From contig NC_135669.1 of the NCBI RefSeq assembly GCF_964188315.1, positions 4,464,001 through 4,528,000 on the forward strand: 64,000 nt of DNA, read 5' to 3'. The notes under the pieces were generated by a model that made no database searches, was not told the DNA's origin, and saw only the letters and a list, made by a program, of their open reading frames with translations. Positions 4,620 to 63,849 of the stretch are shown here, piece after piece. The stretch comes from Podarcis muralis. Taxonomy: Eukaryota. Each line of letters begins with the position of its first letter. Position 1 is the first letter of the stretch. Made by a program: the position numbers and the translations under genes.

Positions 4620-5820
4620 CACTGCTTGCCCACTAGGTTTCTCTTTTGCACAGCAACCCAATCATATGGGCAGGGAGCGGGAGTTGCAGTGATTTTTAGG
4701 AAGTCATTAGCCTGTACCAGGCATCCTATTAGGGAGATCCAGTTTTCTGAGTGCATGTTCTGGAAGTTGGGCAATAGGGGCAGTGCAGGATTCCTATTGG
4801 TGTACCAAGGATTCCCTGCCCAAACTGCTTCAGTTCGTGGAGCATGTTCTCCTGGAGACACCTAGTTTGGCAGTGCTAGGGGATTTTAACATCCATGCCA
4901 ACACAACCTTACAAGGGGCTGCTCGGGACTTCGTGGAAAGCATGGCTTCCATGGGGTTGTCCTGTGTAAATGTCTGGAGGTGGTTGGCAGATGGATGGCA
5001 GCTAACAGACTGAGGTTGAATCCTGACAAGACAGAAGTACTGTTCTTGGGGAAAAGGGGGTGGGTGGGTATGGGGGACTCCCTGGTCCTGAATGGGGTAA
5101 CCGTGCCCCTGAAAGACTAGGTGCGCAGCCTGGGAGTCATTCTGGACTCACAGCTGTCCATGGAGGCACAGATCAATTCTGTGTCCAGGACAGCTGTTTA
5201 CCAGCTCCTTCTGGTATGCAGGCTGAGACCCTACATGCCCACAGACTGTCTCGCTAAACTGGTGCATGCCCTGGTTATCTCTCACTTGGACTACTGCAAT
5301 GTGCTCTATGTGGAGCTACCTTTGAAGGTGACCTGAAAACTACAATTAATCCAGAATGTGGCAGCTAGACTGGTGACTGGGAGTGGCCACCGGAACAATA
5401 TAACACCTGTCCTATATGATCTTCTTCACTGGCTCCCAATATGTTTCCGGGCACAATTCAAAGTGTTGGAGCTGACCTTTAAAGCCCTAAACGGCCTTAG
5501 CCCAGTATACCTGAAGGAGCATCTCTATCTCCACCACTCAGCCCAGACACTGAGGTCCTCCTCCAAGGGTCTTCTGCCGGTTCCCACACTGCAAGAAGCG
5601 AAGTTACAGGGAACCAGGCAGGGGGCCTTCTTGGTAGTGGTGACCTCCCTGTGGAACACCCTCCCCTCAGATGTCAAGGAAATAAACAACTATCAGACTT
5701 TTAGAAGACATCTGAAGGCAGCCCTGTTTAGGGAAGATTTTAAGGATTGATGTTTTTATTATGTTTTAAGATATGTTGTAAGCAGCCCAGCCAGGGAAAC
5801 ACAGACAGATGGGTGGGATA
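4620..5820 (+). mobile_element. L2 LINE, internally deleted (EN fragment joined to RT C-terminus and 3' UTR)
   Basis: GAGVAVIFRK and LAVLGDFNIH (APE endonuclease); then RLNPDKTEVL, LGVILDSQLSM, HALVISHLDYCN, AARLVTG, HWLPICFRAQFKVL, LWNTLP; AT-rich tail near 5820. Confidence 0.9.
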
Positions 5821-10089: not shown

Positions 10090-11163
10090 CCACTTTTCAT
10101 TTTTTTTCCTTTTTTCCTTTTTTCCTTTTTTTTTTTTTTTTTTTTTGCTTTTCTGTTCTATCTTATCATCAACACATTCTATGTTACACAGGATAATAAG
10201 AAAGAAAAATAACACACACACACGAGAATATTAATGGTAACATAACTTTTCCCTCCAGTTTATTTGTCTCTTATAAACCTTCACTTTAGCTTCCACTCTT
10301 TCCCTGGTTTCCGATCTGCTCTTTTCAACTGTGTTTTCTTACTCTGCTAAGTTGTTTTCATTACCTTACCACGTTGTAACATCTACTGCTAAATATTTTT
10401 TGTCAGCCTGTTATGATTATTTTCTTTTTATAATATTTTTCTGTATGATCTATATACAATCTCCACTCCTCTTTTAAATCCTTATCATCTTTATATCTCA
10501 ATCTATTTGTCATGCTGGCAAGTTCTATATATTCTAATATTCTAAGGTGCCACTCTTCTCTCCACTTTTGTGCTACCAAATTCGGGCAGCTTTGGTCACA
10601 TACACCCATAGAGTAATTTGATTGGGGGGGGGTTCTTATGTTATTATTCCCAGAATAAAGCTTCTGAGGTTTTGGGAAATGTCCTTCTAAACACTTTCTT
10701 AAGTTCCTTATACACCATCTCCCAAAATTCTTTTATTATTCCACAAGACCACCATGAATGATAAAATGTGCCGGTTGTTTCTTTGCACTTCCAACATAGG
10801 TCTCTTTTTGATCTAAACATTTTGGCTAGTTCACTTGGTGTCAAATACCACCTATGGATCATTTTTAAGAAGTTGTCTTTTAACGCATAACTAGCAGTAA
10901 ATTTTAGATTTGTTTTCCACAATTGTTCCCACAAATTCAAATCAATATTTTGACCCACATCTTGTGCCCATTTGATCATAGATGATTTCACAAGTTCTTC
11001 ATTCGTTTCCTGGTCAAGTAATATCCTATACATTTTAGATAAATTTTTAACTCTAGATCTTAATATTGCTTTTTTGAATTTTTATGGTTTTTCTGCAAAT
11101 CCCAAATTCTTATCTGCCTTAAATTTTGAGTTTATTTGGTGATAGCCAATCCAACACATATTC

Positions 11164-47414: not shown

Positions 47415-48460
47415 TCTAAGCAGGCCCCATTGTAACCTGTTACCTCTGAGGATGTGGACAGGCTGCTTGAATGAGTGAAACTGTCCACCTGCCTTCTTGA
47501 TCCTTGCCTATCCTGGCTCAAAAAAGTGAGCTGGGTAACGCACTCTGTGGGGTGGTGAATGCTTCCCTCTGTTAGGGAGTCTTCCCAGACCCGCTTAAAG
47601 AAGCAGTTATTAAACCACTTCTTTAAAAACCATATTTGGATCTAGCCATTATGGCCAATTATCGTTTAGTCTCAAATCTTCCATTCCTGAGCAAGGTGGT
47701 CGCTGTACAACTCTGGGCATGTCTGGAGTATGTGGACCACTTGAATCCCTTCCAATCGGGATTCAGGCCTCATCATGGACTGAAACTGATTTGGCTGCAT
47801 TGGTTGATGATCTCCATTGGGCTAAGACAGAGGTGAAATCTATTTCCTGGTTCTGTTGGATCTCTCAAAAGCTTTTGACACCAATGACTGTGACATCCTT
47901 CTAGACCGTCTAGAGGAGTTGGGAGCTGGGGACACAGTTATGCAGTTGTTCCGCTCCTTCCTCCTGGGCTGTGTCCAGAAACTGGTGTTGGGGTGAGGCT
48001 TTGTACTCCCCCCCATGCTTTTTAACATCTATACTAAGCTGATGGGAGAGATCACCAGGGGGTTTGGGCTGGGTGCTCACCAGTATGCAGATAATATGCA
48101 GCTCTACCTCTCTTTTAAATCAGAACCAGTGATGACAGTGGGTGTCCTGTGTGAGTGTTTGAAGGTGGTTGGAAGATGGTTGGTGGTTAATGGGTTGATG
48201 TTGAATCCCAACAAGACGTACTGTTTCTGGGTGACAGGGATGGGCAGGTGTGAGGGACTCCCTGGTCCTGAATGGGGCAACTGTGCCTCTGAAGGTATGC
48301 AGCCTAGGAGTCATTTTAGACTCCTGTCCATGGAGGTCAATTCTGTGTCCAGCGCAGCTCCATCTGGCAGCTCCATGTGGCACACTGGCTGAGACCCAGA
48401 GTGGCTGGGACAAACCATCCAGATGGGTGTGGTATAAATAATAAAATTATTATTAGTAGT
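47415..48460 (+). mobile_element. L2 LINE RT region, degraded, with internal deletions
   Basis: STCLLDPCLSW, NYRLVSNLPFLSKV, QSGFRPHHG, LDLSKAFDT, HQYADNMQLYL, LNPNKT, LGVILD, then 3' tail. Confidence 0.9.
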
Positions 48461-55590: not shown

Positions 55591-57008
55591 AGCATGCTCC
55601 ATTATCCTTAGCTACATCATCTGGCAAGGCAGATCAGTTTATAGGTGAGCTACAATGACTTTACGATAGCAACATCTTATAGGCCAGCCATTGACTTACC
55701 AGCTCAGCAACAAATTTGATCCCTAAAAGGGTCTAAGATGTGGGTTGCCACATCTCCTAAATGAATCTAAATCCTTAATGAATCTAAAAATAGGAAATGC
55801 ATTAGCCAAAAAGTGGAGATATATTTTCACAAAAATGCATCTTATTCAAGGAAATTGCTTTACAAAAATTCACACTAAAATGCTGGTAGTTTTTCATTAG
55901 GACTTTGGGTTTTATTTTTTATAAAAATCACAAACTGGATTGAAAATATGAGAAACTGAATTTGAGATTAGAAAAATATGAAACCAAAGATGGCAGATTC
56001 ACCCATGGCTATGGTGGGCTAAGCACTCTACCTTCCTCCAACCAGACGTGGCCCAATGGCCTGCAGTTGCTGATTCCTTATTATATTATGACTGTATTTA
56101 TGGGCTATTAATCTAGTGTCCAGATCACCCACAAATATTAACATGGAAATTGTGAATGCTTGGCCCAACATTACCATATGCTGTTGGAGCCTTTCCAAAA
56201 AGAAATCATCCTAATTGAAAATAAAAAAACCAAAAAACAAAATAGCTTCTAGAAAGGAACAACACCAAGAACAAGTTGCATAAAGTATCATTGTCAATGT
56301 TGATAAATTGTACGGAAAGGAATTGCACTGTGAAAATAAGAAATGGGGGGGGGGGAGGATTTTGTCCTTGCTCAGGGCACCATATGTGGGTGTGTGATTG
56401 ACCACTAGGACAGCTGATTGACCACTAGGAGAGAAGGACAGTGCTTGATTGGAAGTAGTTTATAAAATATAAAAGAAAACATTCATATTATCAATTTTTA
56501 AAAAATAGAAAGAGGCATTTAAAAATATTCAAAAGGTCATTAAAACCAACAGCACTTTTTTAAAAAAATGCATGTAACTTCTACATTTCTGAGTAGGCTT
56601 GCGTGAACAAAAATGTTTCTGATGTCAATAGGCAGGGAGTTCCCAAGTGAAGATGCAGCCATGACTATTATGTTGAATTTGTAACAGTGCATGTGCTGCT
56701 GACTGAAGCAGTGGAGTGCTCATGCATGGGGCAAGACATTGCACAAGTCAAAGTCTTCTACAGAAATGCATAATCTCTGGAATTTCCCAGTGTAGCGGGA
56801 ATAGGGAGCCATCCATCATCAAATCTGACACACGCACAACACCTAAAAGAGGCACATTTAAATGTTTGCTATCTCCTTCCCACCTTTTGCCTTAAGATGC
56901 TTATCAGAGGCAGCCAAGTGGCATGTGTGAAATTGGTCATGCCTTAGGCATGACTCTGGACTCAGCTACATTAGTAAAAATAAAACATTATAAATGCATT
57001 ATAGCACT

Positions 57009-57027
57009 ATGACACCAGATGGCGCTG
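57009..57027 (+). promoter_or_regulatory. Candidate CTCF binding site
   Basis: ACACCAGATGGCGCTG matches the CTCF core CCASYAGRKGGCRS at 13 of 14 positions, in non-repeat sequence. Confidence 0.55.
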
Positions 57028-57152
57028 TAGAGCTGAAATCAGAACTCTACAAAAAATTTCCTTTGTGAGCTTTAAAACCTTTTTTCCAGAGCGTTTTTTT
57101 AATAGCTGTGTAGATGCAGCCTCTCTTACTCTCAGCCCCCATTTGCAACAAT

Positions 57153-59249
57153 GGGACATCCGACTTCAGGTTAAGATGGCGACAGGCCAGGCAGCCAGCT
57201 CCAGAACTTCACAGATCTTAATTGAGTTTTAATTGATTTTAACTTGTTTTAAACCAAGTATTTTATCCACTATCACCTGTTCTTTTAACCTGGAAGCTGG
57301 AGAGCAGAAGAATGCAGAGCTGTGAGATAAACAGTAATTAACCAGCCTGGAGCTTATCTGTCTTGTCAGCATCCCTTTTATTGAGTGGAATTGCGGAAGG
57401 TGGCTGAAACCGACACTGTAACTATTGAGATTTTAACTTGGTTTTAACACAGTTGTTAATTAGACTTAACTTGGACTTGTTTTATCAACTCCCCATTATT
57501 CTGGAGACCTGAGAACTTGGGAAATGTGTGGTTCACCAGTCTAGGCAGCCTGTTCCCTTCAAATAATTTCACTGTGTAGTTAACAAAGAAGTGTTTTAAG
57601 TTGCTACATATAAATCACCTGGGAGAGGAGACTGTGAATCAACCTCTATGAGAAACTGACCGGCCCACCTGGAAGGAAGCTGGCCACAAGAAGAACTCTT
57701 ATATATTTATATACTGTAAGGAATTGCAATTATTTTCTTTATCTTCTTGGTTTACAAAAGGCTTACAATTGGGAAGGATGGTACTCACCCATGTCAAAGC
57801 TACTAGGGTTCCCTCTCCCCAAGGAAAGCTGAAGGACGTGCGCAGCAACAGAAAACCATCCTGGACTTTTACAGGACAGACAGCAACATACTAATGGGGA
57901 CTAATATTGCAAATACAAGGAGCCTGGATGCAATTCAGCCTCTTGAGAATCATGAAAGCATCTCCCCACAGAAGGCAGACCTGGTATTGTCACTGCTGAA
58001 GAGACTGGCTCATTGACCCAGCATTCTATGATGACGTCTTCAGTGAACCTGGGCAACACCAAGCCTCACAGGTTAAAACTACACAGCCAACAGGCAAAGA
58101 TGTCTCCACCACAGAAACACAGCGACCAGGTGAGAGTGGGAGATCCTATGGGACCACTGTCTTCTATCCCACCACACTGTGGAAGGAAAAAACCCAAAGA
58201 CTCCACTCCCCACTTGAGGCCCCAAACCAGCCCACAAGTGATCATCCACAAGTGGCTACTAAGGAATCCCAAATGGCGTCCTACTATATGAGGCAAAAAT
58301 CCAGGCAGACATTCAAGACACCTTGGGGACGTCCCTGATACTTGGGGAGAGTTTTCACTGTGAACGAATGGGCACACAGAGCCCACGTGGTGGCACTGAA
58401 CTGAACTTCTCAGACTCACTGACCCAAGATATGTTCTGGTCACTGATTCACCTCTTCACAGAGAGGTGCTCCTTGAGCTAAAAGGCCGCCAAAATTACAC
58501 AGGCAGCCACTTAGCCACTTACCCAGAAGAAGACCAGAAACAAACGGCACAGGCATGGACGAGTGGACTTGGGTTTAAATAATCAGACTTAGGAGGATGC
58601 TGGTTAAATTTGGAGAGCCGGATTTTGGGTCTTTCCTGCAGGATATCAGCAGCCTCCCCTTGCTAGCAGCCAGAATTGATCTAGCCTGTTTAAGATACTG
58701 GCACAGGCTAAATGCCTTCAAGAATCATACCCTTACTAAGCTCAGCTGATTGGAGCAACTAGGTACAGGGGGCTGGGCACAAAAGTGCCAAGATAAGCTT
58801 AGGGCTTATAATCTTCAAATGGAGAACTATTTAGCCCTTAGCCCACATGATTTTTGATCAGGGTGCCAACCAAGACAGAGCATCCATCATTGTCACCCAT
58901 TACTCTACTTAGCACCCCCAAATTAAGACCAATCACTCAAGGTCCCAATACCTTGAGACCCTGACCTTCCCACAACTATGCAGGGCCTTTGTAGAACTGA
59001 GATTCCAACAGATGTTCTCAGCATATTTAGGGGGGAGATATCGGGAAATTCTCTATTTGGATCACAAATGTATATGGATGCCATCAGGTAGAGGACATCA
59101 CACACACTCTGGTGATTTGCCCCTGTAGACAATGGCCAGAGAGAAATTTATATTGCCAATTCTTAATTGGCTTCCAGGTTGATCCGCACAGGAAGTGACA
59201 GTTGAATTCCTAGCAGATAAGCATCTATATATTACACACCAGGTAACCC
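57153..59249 (+). mobile_element. Internally deleted RTE-X-like LINE (5' leader, ORF1 remnants, ORF2 C-terminus; no EN or RT recognised)
   Basis: 5' end gggacatccgacttcaggttaagatggcg; ORF2 C-terminal remnants LAARIDLACLRYWHRL, QYLETLTFPQLCRAFVELRFQQMFSAYLGGRYREI, C..GCHQVEDITHTLVICP (CCHC), REKFILPIL, EFLADKHLYITHQV; truncated before its stop codon. Confidence 0.65.
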
Positions 59250-59265
59250 ACACACTAGGTAACCC

Positions 59266-59830
59266 TCTGAGCTCCCCACTTTGCAGCAGCCAGAACCCCC
59301 ACTGGCACTCCGGATCCTCTCCGCTCCTCTGTTCTTCTCCTCCCCGGATCCAGACACATGGAACTGCTGTGCGTGGAGCGGGTGATCTGGGCCAAGTGGG
59401 GTCTGCAGCTGCTAAGGGACTGCCAGGTCCTGCAGAACCTCCTGAGTCAGCAAGAGCACTCTGGCCCCCAGGTCTCCTATTTCCAGTGTGTGCAGAAGGA
59501 GATCCAGCCCTACATGTGGAAGATGTTGGCTTTTTGGATGTTGGGGGTCTGTGCCGGGATCCCGTTCCTCCCCCCTCCCCCTCATACCCTGCTGCTCACG
59601 GGATCAGATCCTGGCTCGCACGACACCCTGTCCCCCCTCCTGCCTCTTCTTGTTCTTTTTCCCACCGCCTGAGAGCTCTTTCCCTATTTTTCCATCCCAA
59701 GTTTCTTCTCTCTTTCTCCTCCTTCCTCTCTCCCTTCCTTTGCTTATTCAGGTCTGCTTTCTGTCTTGGGCTTTTCCCTCCTGTTGCTGATGCTGTTCAT
59801 GCAGGGGCCCTGATTTACGTTTGTTAGATA
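59266..59830 (+). pseudogene. CCND3: Cyclin D3-like 5' fragment: GC-rich leader, exon 1 (ATG 59358 to 59546) and probable intron-1 sequence; no exon 2 or later in the window
   Basis: [62 protein letters not shown] matches the D-cyclin N-terminus (LxCxE; YFQCVQ.EI.P.MRKMLA.WMLE, where KML favours D3 over D1/D2). Homology stops at the conserved intron-1 position. Many Arg codons are altered by CpG transitions. Confidence 0.85.
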
Positions 59831-59879
59831 AAGCTTGGAATATGACTTAAATATGAACAGCAACATAGGCTTTAGTTTG

Positions 59880-60328
59880 GGGAAGTTGTTAACAAACACA
59901 CATTAAAAGTAACCTCCAAAAGCATGCTCTTTTTTATGTACATTACGAATAATATTTTGTAAAAATATTTTTTCTACACATACACACAGTATGTTTGTGC
60001 ATATGTATGTGTCATAAACTGTAGATTATGACACATACATATGCACAAACATAGTCTGTGTGTATGTGTGAGTTTGTAGAAAAAAATATTATTTTTACAA
60101 AATATTTGTAATGTACATAAAAAAAGCTTATAATTTTATGTTGATTAAAATCATTTTACATTTTAAATATTGTATTGTGTTTCCTGTTTTTTTGTGCACT
60201 ACAAATAAAATATGTGCAGTGTGCATAGGAATTTGTTCATATTTTTTTCAAACTATATAGTCTGGCTCTTAACAGTGTCTGAGGAACAGTGAACCGGCCC
60301 CCTGTTTAAAAAGTTTGAGGACCCTTGC
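59880..60328 (+). mobile_element. hAT element 3' portion containing a ~200-bp palindrome
   Basis: Terminal cagtgaaccggccccctgtttaaaaagtttgaggacccttg (hAT-type end); palindrome at 59926-60126. Confidence 0.6.
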
Positions 60329-62444
60329 TTTAGGAGCACATTCCAAAACACAGCTTTAGCTGTACCCATTTATAAATTGTCAATTCTCACATTTAAACAA
60401 GCAAACAAAAGAAAGCCTTCTGGCCTTGTTATGTAGACTTTGCCAGATGCCACTAGGCACAATCCCAGTTCATAATCTCCATCCCATGGTTGGGGAACGG
60501 AGGCCAGCGGCAGAAATGTTCAGGTCGAAACCTAACATCTGGGAAGCCTGCTGGTAATGTTGTGCATTCTCAAAACAACTGAAAAACTTCAAAAGGCCGG
60601 GGATGGCGACTCCGTGATAGCCCCGCTGCATGCCCTCAAATGAAGGCACCCAGAGTCAACCGCTCCCCCTCTCCTCATTCTCGGTTCCTTTCACTGTCAC
60701 TTTAGAAGCATGAAAAAATGACCCTTTGTCACTTTGAAGAGGAAAAGTGAAGCACCATGAACCCCGTCTGTCCAGCAGAAAAGTCGCTCGTCACAGACTG
60801 GTGGGCAGGTTGGCCTCAGCCCCTGAGCCCATCAGAAGTGTCTGTCAGGGAGGTCTTGTCACTTTGTGCAAATGGGAAGGGACCATTACACATGCACGGG
60901 TTATCCTTCAAACCCCATCGCTCGCTGAGGAAGGAAAGAAGACCAAAAGGGGGAAGGACACATTTATACACACACAGAGAGAGAACATAAAATTAAGAAC
61001 CTTGCTTGCTTGCTTTGTCCCTCTCTCAAATAACGTGTTTTGTGTTTTCTTTAAACCAAGACTTGAGCCTACTGCAGAAGTTCTCTCTCTTTGTTGTTGT
61101 TGTTTTTTTAATTCAAGGCTTCGCTTCAGCTTCCTAAAAACAACAACAACCACCCTTTAGGATTCCACCCTCCCACTTAATATATATTCCTCTCTCCCCT
61201 TCCACTGCCAGAAGTACAAAACAAAACCCAGCCATTGTTTCACTCAGCAACAGTCAGCTCTTCCTCCCCCCTGCCCAGTACATGCTACATGACTGGCTGT
61301 GTCCCTTAAGCAATTTGCAAAGCAGCCACACATCAAGATGGCTGGCGGTTAAAACGGCGAGGCGCCAAGTTCCTCAAATTAGATCAGGGACTCCATTGGC
61401 AGATGCCTGCGGAATTTGCTTGGGTCATAATTCCCTTGTAATATAGCAGGGAAGGAGGCTGCTTGTGAGTGTATAAATATAGAGACAAGTTCCTCTTGAC
61501 AAGGTCTGTGGAAAAATAAGTAGGGCAATTTTATGCATACCTAGAAACATAGTTTCTGTGTGCGCACATGTCCTTATTGCTACCATTGCCACTCTGCACC
61601 AGAGGGAGAAAGTACAGGGAGAGCAAGTCAGCAGTGGCAATAATCAACAGCAGGCCTGCTTCAAGATATGAGCCTCAGCAGGTGTGACTAATGAGATCAG
61701 CCGCTGATGCTCTGGAGATCTGAATCAGAAACGCCATTCACTCCTTAAGTGGCCTTAGGAAAGAGTCTGGTGTAGCAGAGAGAGGACTGGATGAGTACTG
61801 TGGGGCAGGAGGGTTTGATCCAGTTTACATTTCCAGGAGAAACTGCTTAGTTCATACTTCCTGAAATAACGCACAAATAATACATACACTTCTCCAGATT
61901 TTGCAACATGCAATGTGTACAAATGATGCACACATTCAAATGTTAAAAAGTCCTCCAAGAATGGCAGTGCCTGTTTCTCAGGCCAGAGGCTCATCTGACA
62001 CCAGTGCTTCTAGGAGTGGCCCTGCAAGGTTTTCTTCTTCTGGCTTGGAGTCCTCAGCTCCATTGCCTGAAGAAGAGGAACCTGACTCTTGGTCCTTGAC
62101 AACACCCAGTAGGGAGCCAAGCTCTCCCTCGTCCTGCTATTGCTGCCTGCTCTCTTGTTGTCTACAAGTGAGCAAGCAGCGAGAGGAGCAACAAAGAGTA
62201 GTAAATATATTCACACTTTGTGCTCTCTCTGGGAAATGGTGCCAAGTGGAGCAAAAGGGGGAGGATGAATAAATGGGCCTCAGCAGCAAAGAGGAGATTC
62301 CACTCAGGTTAGGGGTCCCACTGAGAGCATCATGCCCATAGCTTTCCCCAAACCAGGAACCAGCCCTGCCTCTTGCCAAGCTATATAAACAGTTGGCAAT
62401 TGACAAATAGGAGGTGAGTGGGGGAAATACAGAAGGGTTAAATG

Positions 62445-63711: not shown

Positions 63712-63849
63712 NNNNNNNNNNNNNNNNNNNNNNNNNNNNNNNNNNNNNNNNNNNNNNNNNNNNNNNNNNNNNNNNNNNNNNNNNNNNNNNNNNNNNNNNN
63801 NNNNNNNNNNNNNNNNNNNNNNNNNNNNNNNNNNNNNNNNNNNNNNNNN
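63712..63849. other. Assembly gap (138 N)
   Basis: Run of N. Confidence 1.

What the first reader, a model, noticed from the sequence alone, without database searches (positions are those of the whole stretch)
57153..59830. LINE-host gene chimera: RTE-X-like element fused to the 5' end of cyclin D3
Seen: the LINE ORF2 C-terminus stops at ...HLYITHQV, short of its normal stop and 3' UTR. A 16-bp tandem duplication follows (acacaccaggtaaccc 59234-59249 / acacactaggtaaccc 59250-59265), then the CCND3-like leader, exon 1 and downstream sequence, all on the same strand. I found no poly(A) tail or flanking TSD. Inference: gene-fragment capture by RT template switching between CCND3 (pre-)mRNA and LINE RNA, or by microhomology-mediated DNA repair. 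The LINE 5' leader (with a YY1-like aagatggcg) could drive a chimeric transcript. If multi-copy, this would be a non-autonomous retroelement carrying a cell-cycle gene fragment.
Basis: partly seen in the sequence, partly recalled or inferred. Interest (0 to 1): 0.75.

Follow-up and report, generated by a model that had tools for sequence, protein, structure and literature searches.

The report
Dead cyclin D3 fragment beside LINE remnant
A decayed, silent copy of the first exon of the lizard cyclin D3 gene sits directly behind a broken-off 0.65 kb piece of a LINE retrotransposon; the pairing is real but looks like an ordinary DNA-level rearrangement, not a mobile gene-carrying element.

Summary
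The core observation holds. A LINE ORF2 C-terminal remnant ends at ...HLYITHQVT (59248), short of its normal end. A 16-bp tandem duplication follows (59234-59265). Then come a cyclin D3 leader, exon 1 (59358-59546) and unspliced intron 1, all on the + strand, with no poly(A) and no target-site duplication.

Three parts of the finding do not hold:
- The LINE is only about 0.65 kb (about 58600-59248) and is truncated at both ends.
- No reverse transcriptase, endonuclease or 5' leader lies in 57153-58600, which is single-copy or belongs to another repeat. There is therefore no LINE promoter.
- "RTE-X" could not be tested.

The exon is a dead copy: 17 of 63 residues are changed, including R>W three times, and CpG observed/expected is 0.13. 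RNA reads over it come from a paralogue that differs at 7-13 positions per read. The junction is single-copy and is shared with a relative about 3% diverged. The locus matches a Podarcis muralis 80-aa annotated "uncharacterized protein". A second partial copy exists in that genome.

Best reading: an unprocessed CCND3 pseudogene fragment joined to a LINE remnant by DNA-level repair or duplication. RT template switching is not excluded, but it fails the known hallmarks.

The parts
57153..58599 (.). It is not LINE: part of a different, moderately repeated element (57041-57485) followed by single-copy sequence.
   Evidence: Depth 178>49 over 57041-57481, then 12-19 (single copy) over 57482-58510. 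No RT/APE tblastn hit. No Pfam hit on its ORFs.
58600..59248 (+). 5'- and 3'-truncated remnant of a squamate LINE ORF2 C-terminal region. It has several frameshifts and stops, includes a CX3CX7HX4C-type motif region, and has a roughly 21-nt internal deletion near 58651-58654.
   Evidence: tblastn with P0017: residues 92-156 = 58651-58845 and residues 161-298 = 58838-59248, joint E 1.5e-42. phmmer E 7e-12. P0025 'QILGLSKGTPAA' resembles 58619-58654 in another frame. Multi-copy depth 287-413 over 58658-59245.
59234..59265 (+). 16-bp tandem duplication ACACACCAGGTAACCC / ACACACTAGGTAACCC at the point where LINE homology stops.
   Evidence: family D16, 94%.
59266..59300 (+). Junction zone of uncertain origin. 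It may be the last LINE codons (HFAAAR compared with LFALAAK of homologues), a filler templated from 58654-58675, or the start of the CCND3 leader.
   Evidence: Local alignment of 59272-59295 to 58654-58675 scores 15; 6 of 2000 shuffles reach that. Homologue C-termini. BLASTP to a lizard CCND3 leader does not reach this far.
59301..59357 (+). Cyclin D3 5' leader (untranslated).
   Evidence: Reads of the expressed paralogue's mRNA cover part of bin 59246-59392 at depth 1.4-2.1. My estimate of their reach is about 59300-59320. BLASTP to P0004 includes LPGSRH before the Met.
59358..59546 (+). Cyclin D3 exon 1 pseudo-exon: 63 open codons, 17 replaced relative to other lizards, including R11W, R14W, R54W, R22C, R23Q, R35H and E63G.
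   Evidence: CpG observed/expected 0.13. RNA reads stop at 59546 and carry the paralogue's letters.
59547..59830 (+). Unspliced 5' part of cyclin D3 intron 1. The 3' limit is approximate; homology to paralogues is seen to at least 59757 and perhaps to about 59980.
   Evidence: Read-through translation matches P0002 up to the shared stop at 59672, and matches the start of P0003 and P0004. A paralogue contig in X20 covers 59464-59757, and extra depth runs to about 59980.
60509..60560 (+). Second exon of the Podarcis muralis gene model (UniRef A0A670JH82, 80 aa) that starts with the pseudo-exon. Donor at 59553|59554, acceptor at 60508|60509.
   Evidence: The AEMFRSKPNIWEACW* peptide was located. 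No RNA reads lie there in X23 or X24.

Best explanation
This is an old, silent, unprocessed pseudogene fragment of cyclin D3. It comprises the leader, exon 1 and the first few hundred bases of intron 1. It lies immediately 3' of a doubly truncated 0.65 kb remnant of a squamate LINE ORF2 tail.

The two pieces were most likely joined at the DNA level. A genomic piece of the CCND3 5' region was copied to, or duplicated within, this region. It was then ligated to a broken LINE copy by non-homologous or microhomology-mediated repair, or by replication template switching. That event left the 16-bp tandem duplication and possibly a short templated filler.

Shown: both pieces are present, both LINE ends are truncated, the intron is retained, the exon has decayed and is silent, the junction is single-copy and shared with a related species, and a second partial copy exists.

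Inferred: the joining mechanism.
For: - The LINE piece corresponds to residues 92-298 of P0017 only. Nothing from the RT or APE domains is present, and the natural C-terminus and 3' UTR are missing. A LINE that lacks its 3' end cannot be a simple target-primed insertion.
- The intron is retained. ORF read-through matches P0002, P0003 and P0004, and mRNA reads of the expressed gene stop exactly at 59546. The copy is therefore not a processed retrocopy.
- There is no poly(A) and no flanking direct repeat.
- The junction carries a 16-bp tandem copy. It also has a 24-nt patch resembling 58654-58675, with about p = 0.003 by shuffling. Both fit templated insertions at repair junctions.
- Depth across 59246-59392 is single-copy.
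- A second Podarcis muralis copy (P0002) shares derived residues W14, L16, R20, D21 and Q23 but has a different 5' end. This suggests repeated DNA duplications with arbitrary breakpoints.
- Exon decay: 17 of 63 residues are changed, six of them Arg-codon CpG changes, and CpG observed/expected is 0.13.
Against: - The parental CCND3 locus and other copies of the LINE could not be read as DNA. The CCND3 breakpoint relative to the transcription start is therefore unknown.
- The collinear orientation, and a gene fragment that may begin near its mRNA 5' end, are what an RT jump at the cap would also give.
- The 16-bp duplication could be later slippage unrelated to the joining.
- P0002's 5' end comes from a gene model and may reflect splicing rather than a breakpoint.
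Confidence: 0.6

Rival explanations
1. Two-step adjacency. The LINE inserted normally next to an already resident CCND3 fragment, or the same arrangement already exists upstream of the real CCND3 gene and was copied as a block. A later deletion then removed the LINE 3' end together with upstream flank, bringing the two pieces together.
For: The LINE piece is 5'-truncated like ordinary insertions. Its divergence from other copies is mostly 80-95% identity, broadly similar to the divergence of the exon from the expressed gene at 7-13 differences per 150-nt read. Small deletions and tandem slippage are common in decaying DNA, and this LINE piece itself has a roughly 21-nt internal deletion.
Against: It needs more events than a single joining. 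Nothing identifies a deletion scar. The LINE remainder is not found downstream: no multi-copy LINE depth appears in 59250-60127.
Confidence: 0.22
2. RT-mediated chimera. A LINE reverse transcriptase primed inside CCND3 intron 1 of a pre-mRNA and copied to its 5' end. It then jumped to an internal point near the end of ORF2 in a LINE RNA and stopped after about 0.65 kb.
For: Both parts are on one strand in the order this model predicts. The LINE is truncated on both sides. The gene part contains only transcribed-looking sequence (leader, exon, intron) as far as can be seen. Real mRNA reads reach upstream of the ATG. Short duplications can arise at template jumps.
Against: Described template-switch chimeras carry the LINE 3'-terminal fragment at the 3' side, because synthesis starts on LINE RNA, and are flanked by 10-20 bp direct repeats (PMC2104539). 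Here the LINE is at the 5' side, lacks its 3' terminus, and no direct repeats are found. Priming in an intron without the LINE 3' tail is unexpected for LINEs that recognise their own 3' end. The junction is single-copy.
Confidence: 0.12
3. This is the original CCND3 locus. The LINE remnant merely lies in its promoter, and the gene is still used.
For: Exon 1 keeps an open frame, an intact LxCxE-like MELLCVE start and a GT after codon 63. Ensembl-derived UniRef entry A0A670JH82 models a two-exon 80-aa product here.
Against: No other cyclin D exon lies in the 4.4 kb downstream. Invariant residues are lost, including R54W and E63G. No RNA read at 95% identity or more lies on the exon in X23, and all exon-1 reads listed in either run carry the paralogue's letters with 7-13 further differences. 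CpG observed/expected is 0.13.
Confidence: 0.04

Closest known systems
Unprocessed (duplicated) pseudogene fragments / gene-fragment duplicates created by segmental duplication or ectopic DNA repair
   Same: The intron and leader are retained. There is no poly(A) and no TSD. Conserved residues and CpGs have decayed. The copy is silent. More than one copy exists in the genome.
   Different: The 5' breakpoint abuts a LINE remnant that is itself cut off at its 3' end, with a 16-bp tandem copy at the seam. The source locus has not been seen.
LINE template-switch chimeric retrogenes (U6/L1 chimeras in mammals; WEIRD-MGL 'MINE' chimeras in Magnaporthe, PMC2104539)
   Same: Two unrelated transcribed sequences are fused head to tail on one strand, and one of them is a truncated LINE.
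   Different: In the known cases the LINE 3'-terminal fragment is the 3' part and the insert is flanked by 10-20 bp direct repeats. Here the LINE is the 5' part, lacks its 3' terminus, and no direct repeats exist.
LINE 3' transduction (read-through of a LINE into downstream host DNA, then retrotransposition; known for L1, from my own knowledge)
   Same: LINE sequence is followed by host gene sequence on the same strand.
   Different: Transduction keeps the complete LINE 3' end before the flank and ends in a new poly(A) plus TSD. None of these is present here.

Membership tests
Cyclin D3 (CCND3) exon 1 copy | Sequence closer to cyclin D3 than to D1/D2 over the N-terminal 63 residues (MELLC...YFQCVQ...KMLA.WML) | tested here: met
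   PDB phmmer: D3 at 4e-13, D1 at 3e-9. Hits named cyclin-D3-like in birds, with Pfam Cyclin_N on relatives.
Functional cyclin D3 gene | Conserved residues kept, further exons downstream, and transcripts matching the locus | tested here: not met
   17 of 63 residues changed, including R54W and E63G. No other exons in the window. No RNA read at 95% identity or more on the exon in X23, and all exon-1 reads listed in either run carry the paralogue's letters.
Processed retrocopy | Introns removed, poly(A) tail, target-site duplication | tested here: not met
   Intron 1 is retained. No poly(A) or TSD.
LINE (non-LTR retrotransposon) ORF2 remnant | Homology to ORF2 proteins that carry an RT domain, and multi-copy in the genome | tested here: met
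   P0017 at E 7e-12. P0019 carries the end of RVT_1, E 1e-7. tblastn joint E 1.5e-42. Depth 287-413 against about 10.
RTE-X (RTEX) clade LINE | Phylogenetic placement of the RT domain within RTEX | not testable with these tools
   No RT domain is present in the window copy and no reference clade sequences are at hand. Relatives are unnamed squamate proteins. The best PDB RT match is R2, E 0.47, which is not significant.
Full-length or promoter-bearing LINE | 5' UTR, ORF1, APE and RT upstream of the ORF2 tail | tested here: not met
   No hits in 57000-58600. That stretch is single-copy or another repeat.
Template-switch chimeric retrogene | LINE 3'-terminal fragment forms the 3' part of the chimera | tested here: not met
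   The LINE is the 5' part and lacks its last 9-40 or more codons and its 3' UTR. Rule taken from PMC2104539.
Template-switch chimeric retrogene | Flanking 10-20 bp direct repeats (TSD) | tested here: not met
   No 10-mer exact match, no 12-mer with 1 mismatch and no 14-mer with 2 mismatches between 58500-58660 and 59249-60200. Decay could hide a short one.
Multi-copy non-autonomous retroelement carrying the gene fragment | The same LINE/CCND3 junction present in many copies | tested here: not met
   Bin 59246-59392 has depth 23 in X1 and 23.2 in X20. In X20 that equals the one orthologous contig.

The most novel reading that the evidence does not exclude
The composite is a 'reverse-order' RT product. 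A squamate LINE reverse transcriptase primed inside an intron of CCND3 pre-mRNA, ran to the cap and then jumped onto LINE RNA. This would give a chimera with the LINE at the 5' side, a class not described for template-switch chimeras.
Probability: 0.1. Interest if true: 0.45.

Novelty: new member of a known kind. Interest (0 to 1): 0.17.

Why it matters
It matters little for biology at large. It is one more decayed gene fragment next to a transposon remnant.

It is useful as an annotation warning. The Podarcis muralis 80-aa 'uncharacterized protein' A0A670JH82 and the 107-aa 'cyclin N-terminal domain-containing protein' A0A670K678 are probably pseudogene fragments of CCND3.

It is also a small, datable example of CpG-island decay after relocation, and of a complex repair junction. 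If the RT-mediated reading were shown to be right, it would extend the known geometry of LINE chimeras.

Tried and rejected
I could not fetch the DNA of the parental CCND3 locus, the P0002 locus or other LINE copies.
- The search for homologous proteins with the 71-aa LINE piece found no candidate.
- Pfam on the LINE pieces and on ORFs in 58013-58443 gave nothing.
- The ESM Atlas gave only sub-threshold bacterial look-alikes, which I disregarded.
- No other copy of the LINE tail, the CCND3 fragment or the flanks exists inside the window (blastn).
- No other cyclin D exons are in the window.
- The TSD searches were negative.
- A PDB search with the LINE relative P0019 gave no significant RT match, so no clade could be assigned.
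- Names of LINE relatives are uninformative.
- The search of earlier findings by sequence and by words found nothing.
- Read laying hid the loose ends at 59246-59265 (647 rows not shown). I therefore could not see directly what other LINE copies carry after ...CAGGTAACC.
- I first read the repeat between 58654-58675 and 59272-59295 as a possible target-site duplication. I rejected that because 58654-58675 is LINE coding sequence: LAARIDLA is identical in P0025.
The N run 63712-63849 was left alone.

Full report
WHAT IS THERE

The + strand at 59358-59546 encodes 63 codons beginning MELLCVE... and ending ...KMLAFWMLG. Against all PDB chains the best matches are cyclin D3 (E 4e-13), ahead of cyclin D1 (3e-9). 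After codon 63 the sequence runs on as GTCTGT..., which is an unspliced intron. Its read-through translation ([13 protein letters not shown]...LFPTA*) matches the read-through of other lizard cyclin D3 exon-1 ORFs (P0002, P0003, P0004). No other cyclin D exon motif occurs anywhere in the 64 kb window.

WHOSE GENOME

The best protein hit is UniRef A0A670JH82 (P0001), an 80-aa 'uncharacterized protein' of Podarcis muralis. It is identical at 62 of 63 exon-1 residues. Its last 16 residues are encoded at 60509-60560 of the window. The window is therefore from Podarcis muralis or a very close relative, and this locus is already annotated there as a two-exon gene model.

THE EXON IS A DEAD COPY

Relative to other lizards' exon 1 (P0003 and P0004: [63 protein letters not shown]), the window copy has 17 of 63 replacements. 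These include R11W, R14W, R54W, R22C, R23Q, R35H and E63G, at positions invariant in D cyclins. CpG observed/expected is 0.13 at 57% G+C, with a TpG excess.

Stranded RNA reads from two runs of the same species lie on the leader and exon, with the first mate on the minus strand, so the RNA is on the + strand. They stop at 59546. They carry other letters: 59401 G>A gives Asp15, 59463 G>A gives Ser36, and 59470 A>G gives Arg38. Each read has 7-13 further differences. Run X23 has no read at 95% identity or more anywhere on the laid stretch. The reads therefore come from the functional CCND3 gene elsewhere, and this copy is silent in those samples.

A second partial copy exists in P. muralis (P0002, UniRef A0A670K678). 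It shares W14, L16, R20, D21 and Q23 with the window copy but keeps R54 and E63 and has a different N-terminal part.

THE LINE PART

phmmer against 1.8 billion representative proteins was run with the 71-aa stop-free piece 58913-59125. It found seven proteins; the six I fetched and read are C-terminal fragments of squamate LINE ORF2s. They include P0017 (Phrynocephalus, E 7e-12) and P0019 and P0021 (Rhineura). P0019 carries the end of an RVT_1 domain.

tblastn places P0017 residues 92-156 on 58651-58845 and residues 161-298 on 58838-59248, with joint E 1.5e-42 and several frameshifts and stops. A further motif, QILGLSKGTPAA of P0025, matches 58619-58654 in another frame. Together with the loose end of RNA reads at 58654, this indicates a roughly 21-nt internal deletion and a 5' limit near 58600.

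Upstream of that nothing is LINE-like:
- None of the 72 RT-bearing relatives hits 57000-58600.
- Pfam finds nothing there.
- Depth is single-copy over 57482-58510.
- 57041-57481, which holds the 'aagatggcg' motif, is a different, moderately repeated element.

The clade (RTE-X) could not be tested. The homologues show a CX3CX7HX4C motif before the C-terminus. No named relatives were found, and no significant PDB RT match.

THE 3' TRUNCATION IS REAL

All homologues continue beyond ...VTHSVT:
- P0017 continues with LFALAAKKL.
- P0019 continues with ...FALAAKKLRASYVKKL.
- P0021 continues with ...YALAAQKLRANFLKDIGLQE.

The window alignment ends at 59248, and multi-copy depth falls from 413 to 23 between the bins that meet at 59245/59246. 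The copy therefore lacks at least the last 9-40 codons and the 3' UTR. A normal target-primed insertion cannot produce that.

THE SEAM

The 16-bp unit ACACACCAGGTAACCC (59234-59249) is repeated once with one change (59250-59265). If that second unit is skipped, the reading continues [10 protein letters not shown]. This resembles the homologues' T-L-F-A-L-A-A-K, so the LINE may run on to about 59295, with the duplication internal to it.

Alternatively, 59272-59295 is a 21/24 match with two gaps to 58654-58675 of the same LINE piece. Six of 2000 shuffles reach that score. It could be a templated filler.

A lizard CCND3 leader (P0004) aligns only from LPGSRH before the Met. By my estimate from bin depths, reads of the real mRNA reach about 59300-59320. 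I therefore place the breakpoint somewhere in 59249-59300.

IS THE JUNCTION REAL, AND HOW MANY COPIES?

A 677-nt contig from an independent short-read run covers 59197-59873 without a difference. In a related species (organism B, about 3% diverged) a 287-nt contig covers 59230-59516 with 9 differences. That contig has the ancestral Asp15, Ser36 and Arg38. The arrangement therefore predates the split of the two species.

Depth in the junction bin equals that of the single orthologous contig in organism B. The exon and intron bins hold one or two extra copies. The junction is single-copy, whereas the gene fragment has a few paralogues.

MECHANISM

- Processed retrocopy is excluded: the intron is kept, and there is no poly(A).
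- 3' transduction is excluded: the LINE 3' end is absent.
- Template-switch chimeras as described have the LINE 3'-terminal fragment at the 3' side and 10-20 bp flanking direct repeats (PMC2104539). Here the order is reversed, the LINE 3' terminus is missing, and no direct repeats are found.

This leaves DNA-level joining as the most economical reading. A duplicated genomic piece of the CCND3 5' region was joined to a broken LINE copy, with a short tandem or templated copy at the seam. I give this about 0.6. A two-step history, adjacency followed by a deletion, gets about 0.2. An unusual RT event with the LINE at the 5' side gets about 0.1.

VERDICT

The sequence observation is largely right, but the element is far smaller than described. 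The interpretation as a chimeric, possibly mobile or promoter-bearing element is not supported. This is an ordinary pseudogene fragment beside a LINE remnant, of low general interest.

Noticed in passing
window 59930-60124: A roughly 195-nt near-perfect palindrome: TG/CA-rich inner arms 59976-60020 / 60023-60067 at 89%, and AT-rich outer arms 59930-59973 / 60081-60124 at 82%. It lies just downstream of the CCND3 fragment and is at single-copy depth. Rfam gives only sub-threshold miRNA-family hits (best 49.6 bits against a gathering score of 101).
   Followed up: partly
window 60128-60421 and 56619-56661: In both species one short-read contig joins 60410 to 56619 through 31 other letters (AGCTTTGAGCAGGTACAGTGAAGGTGAGTGC). 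The high-copy repeat piece downstream of the finding and a 43-nt high-copy piece 3.75 kb upstream are thus consecutive parts of one repeat family, but in permuted order here. No copy of the first part lies upstream of 56619. It is probably another genomic copy of a very abundant repeat. I did not resolve it.
   Followed up: partly
window 59358-59553 + 60509-60560: The Podarcis muralis annotation (UniRef A0A670JH82, 80 aa) splices the pseudo-exon to a 52-nt second exon, using a donor 7 nt beyond the ancestral one. The product would keep the N-terminal LxCxE-like MELLCVE motif. No RNA support was seen in the two runs examined.
   Followed up: partly
protein P0024 (Rhineura floridana, not in window): A RefSeq protein named '3 beta-hydroxysteroid dehydrogenase type 7 isoform X1' contains a segment 62% identical to this LINE family's ORF2. 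It is probably a gene model that swallowed a LINE fragment.
   Followed up: no
window 5358-5750, 47850-48392, 10644-11033, 23559-23927: Other LINE remnants of different kinds are present: RTE/BovB-like RT pieces (YADNMQLY motif) and L1-type C-terminal zinc-knuckle pieces (CWKCKE...H..W.C). None is related to the LINE tail of the finding.
   Followed up: no
window 57041-57485: A moderately repeated element (depth 178 falling to 49) with internal direct and inverted 'TTTTAACTTG' repeats. Its family was not identified.
   Followed up: no
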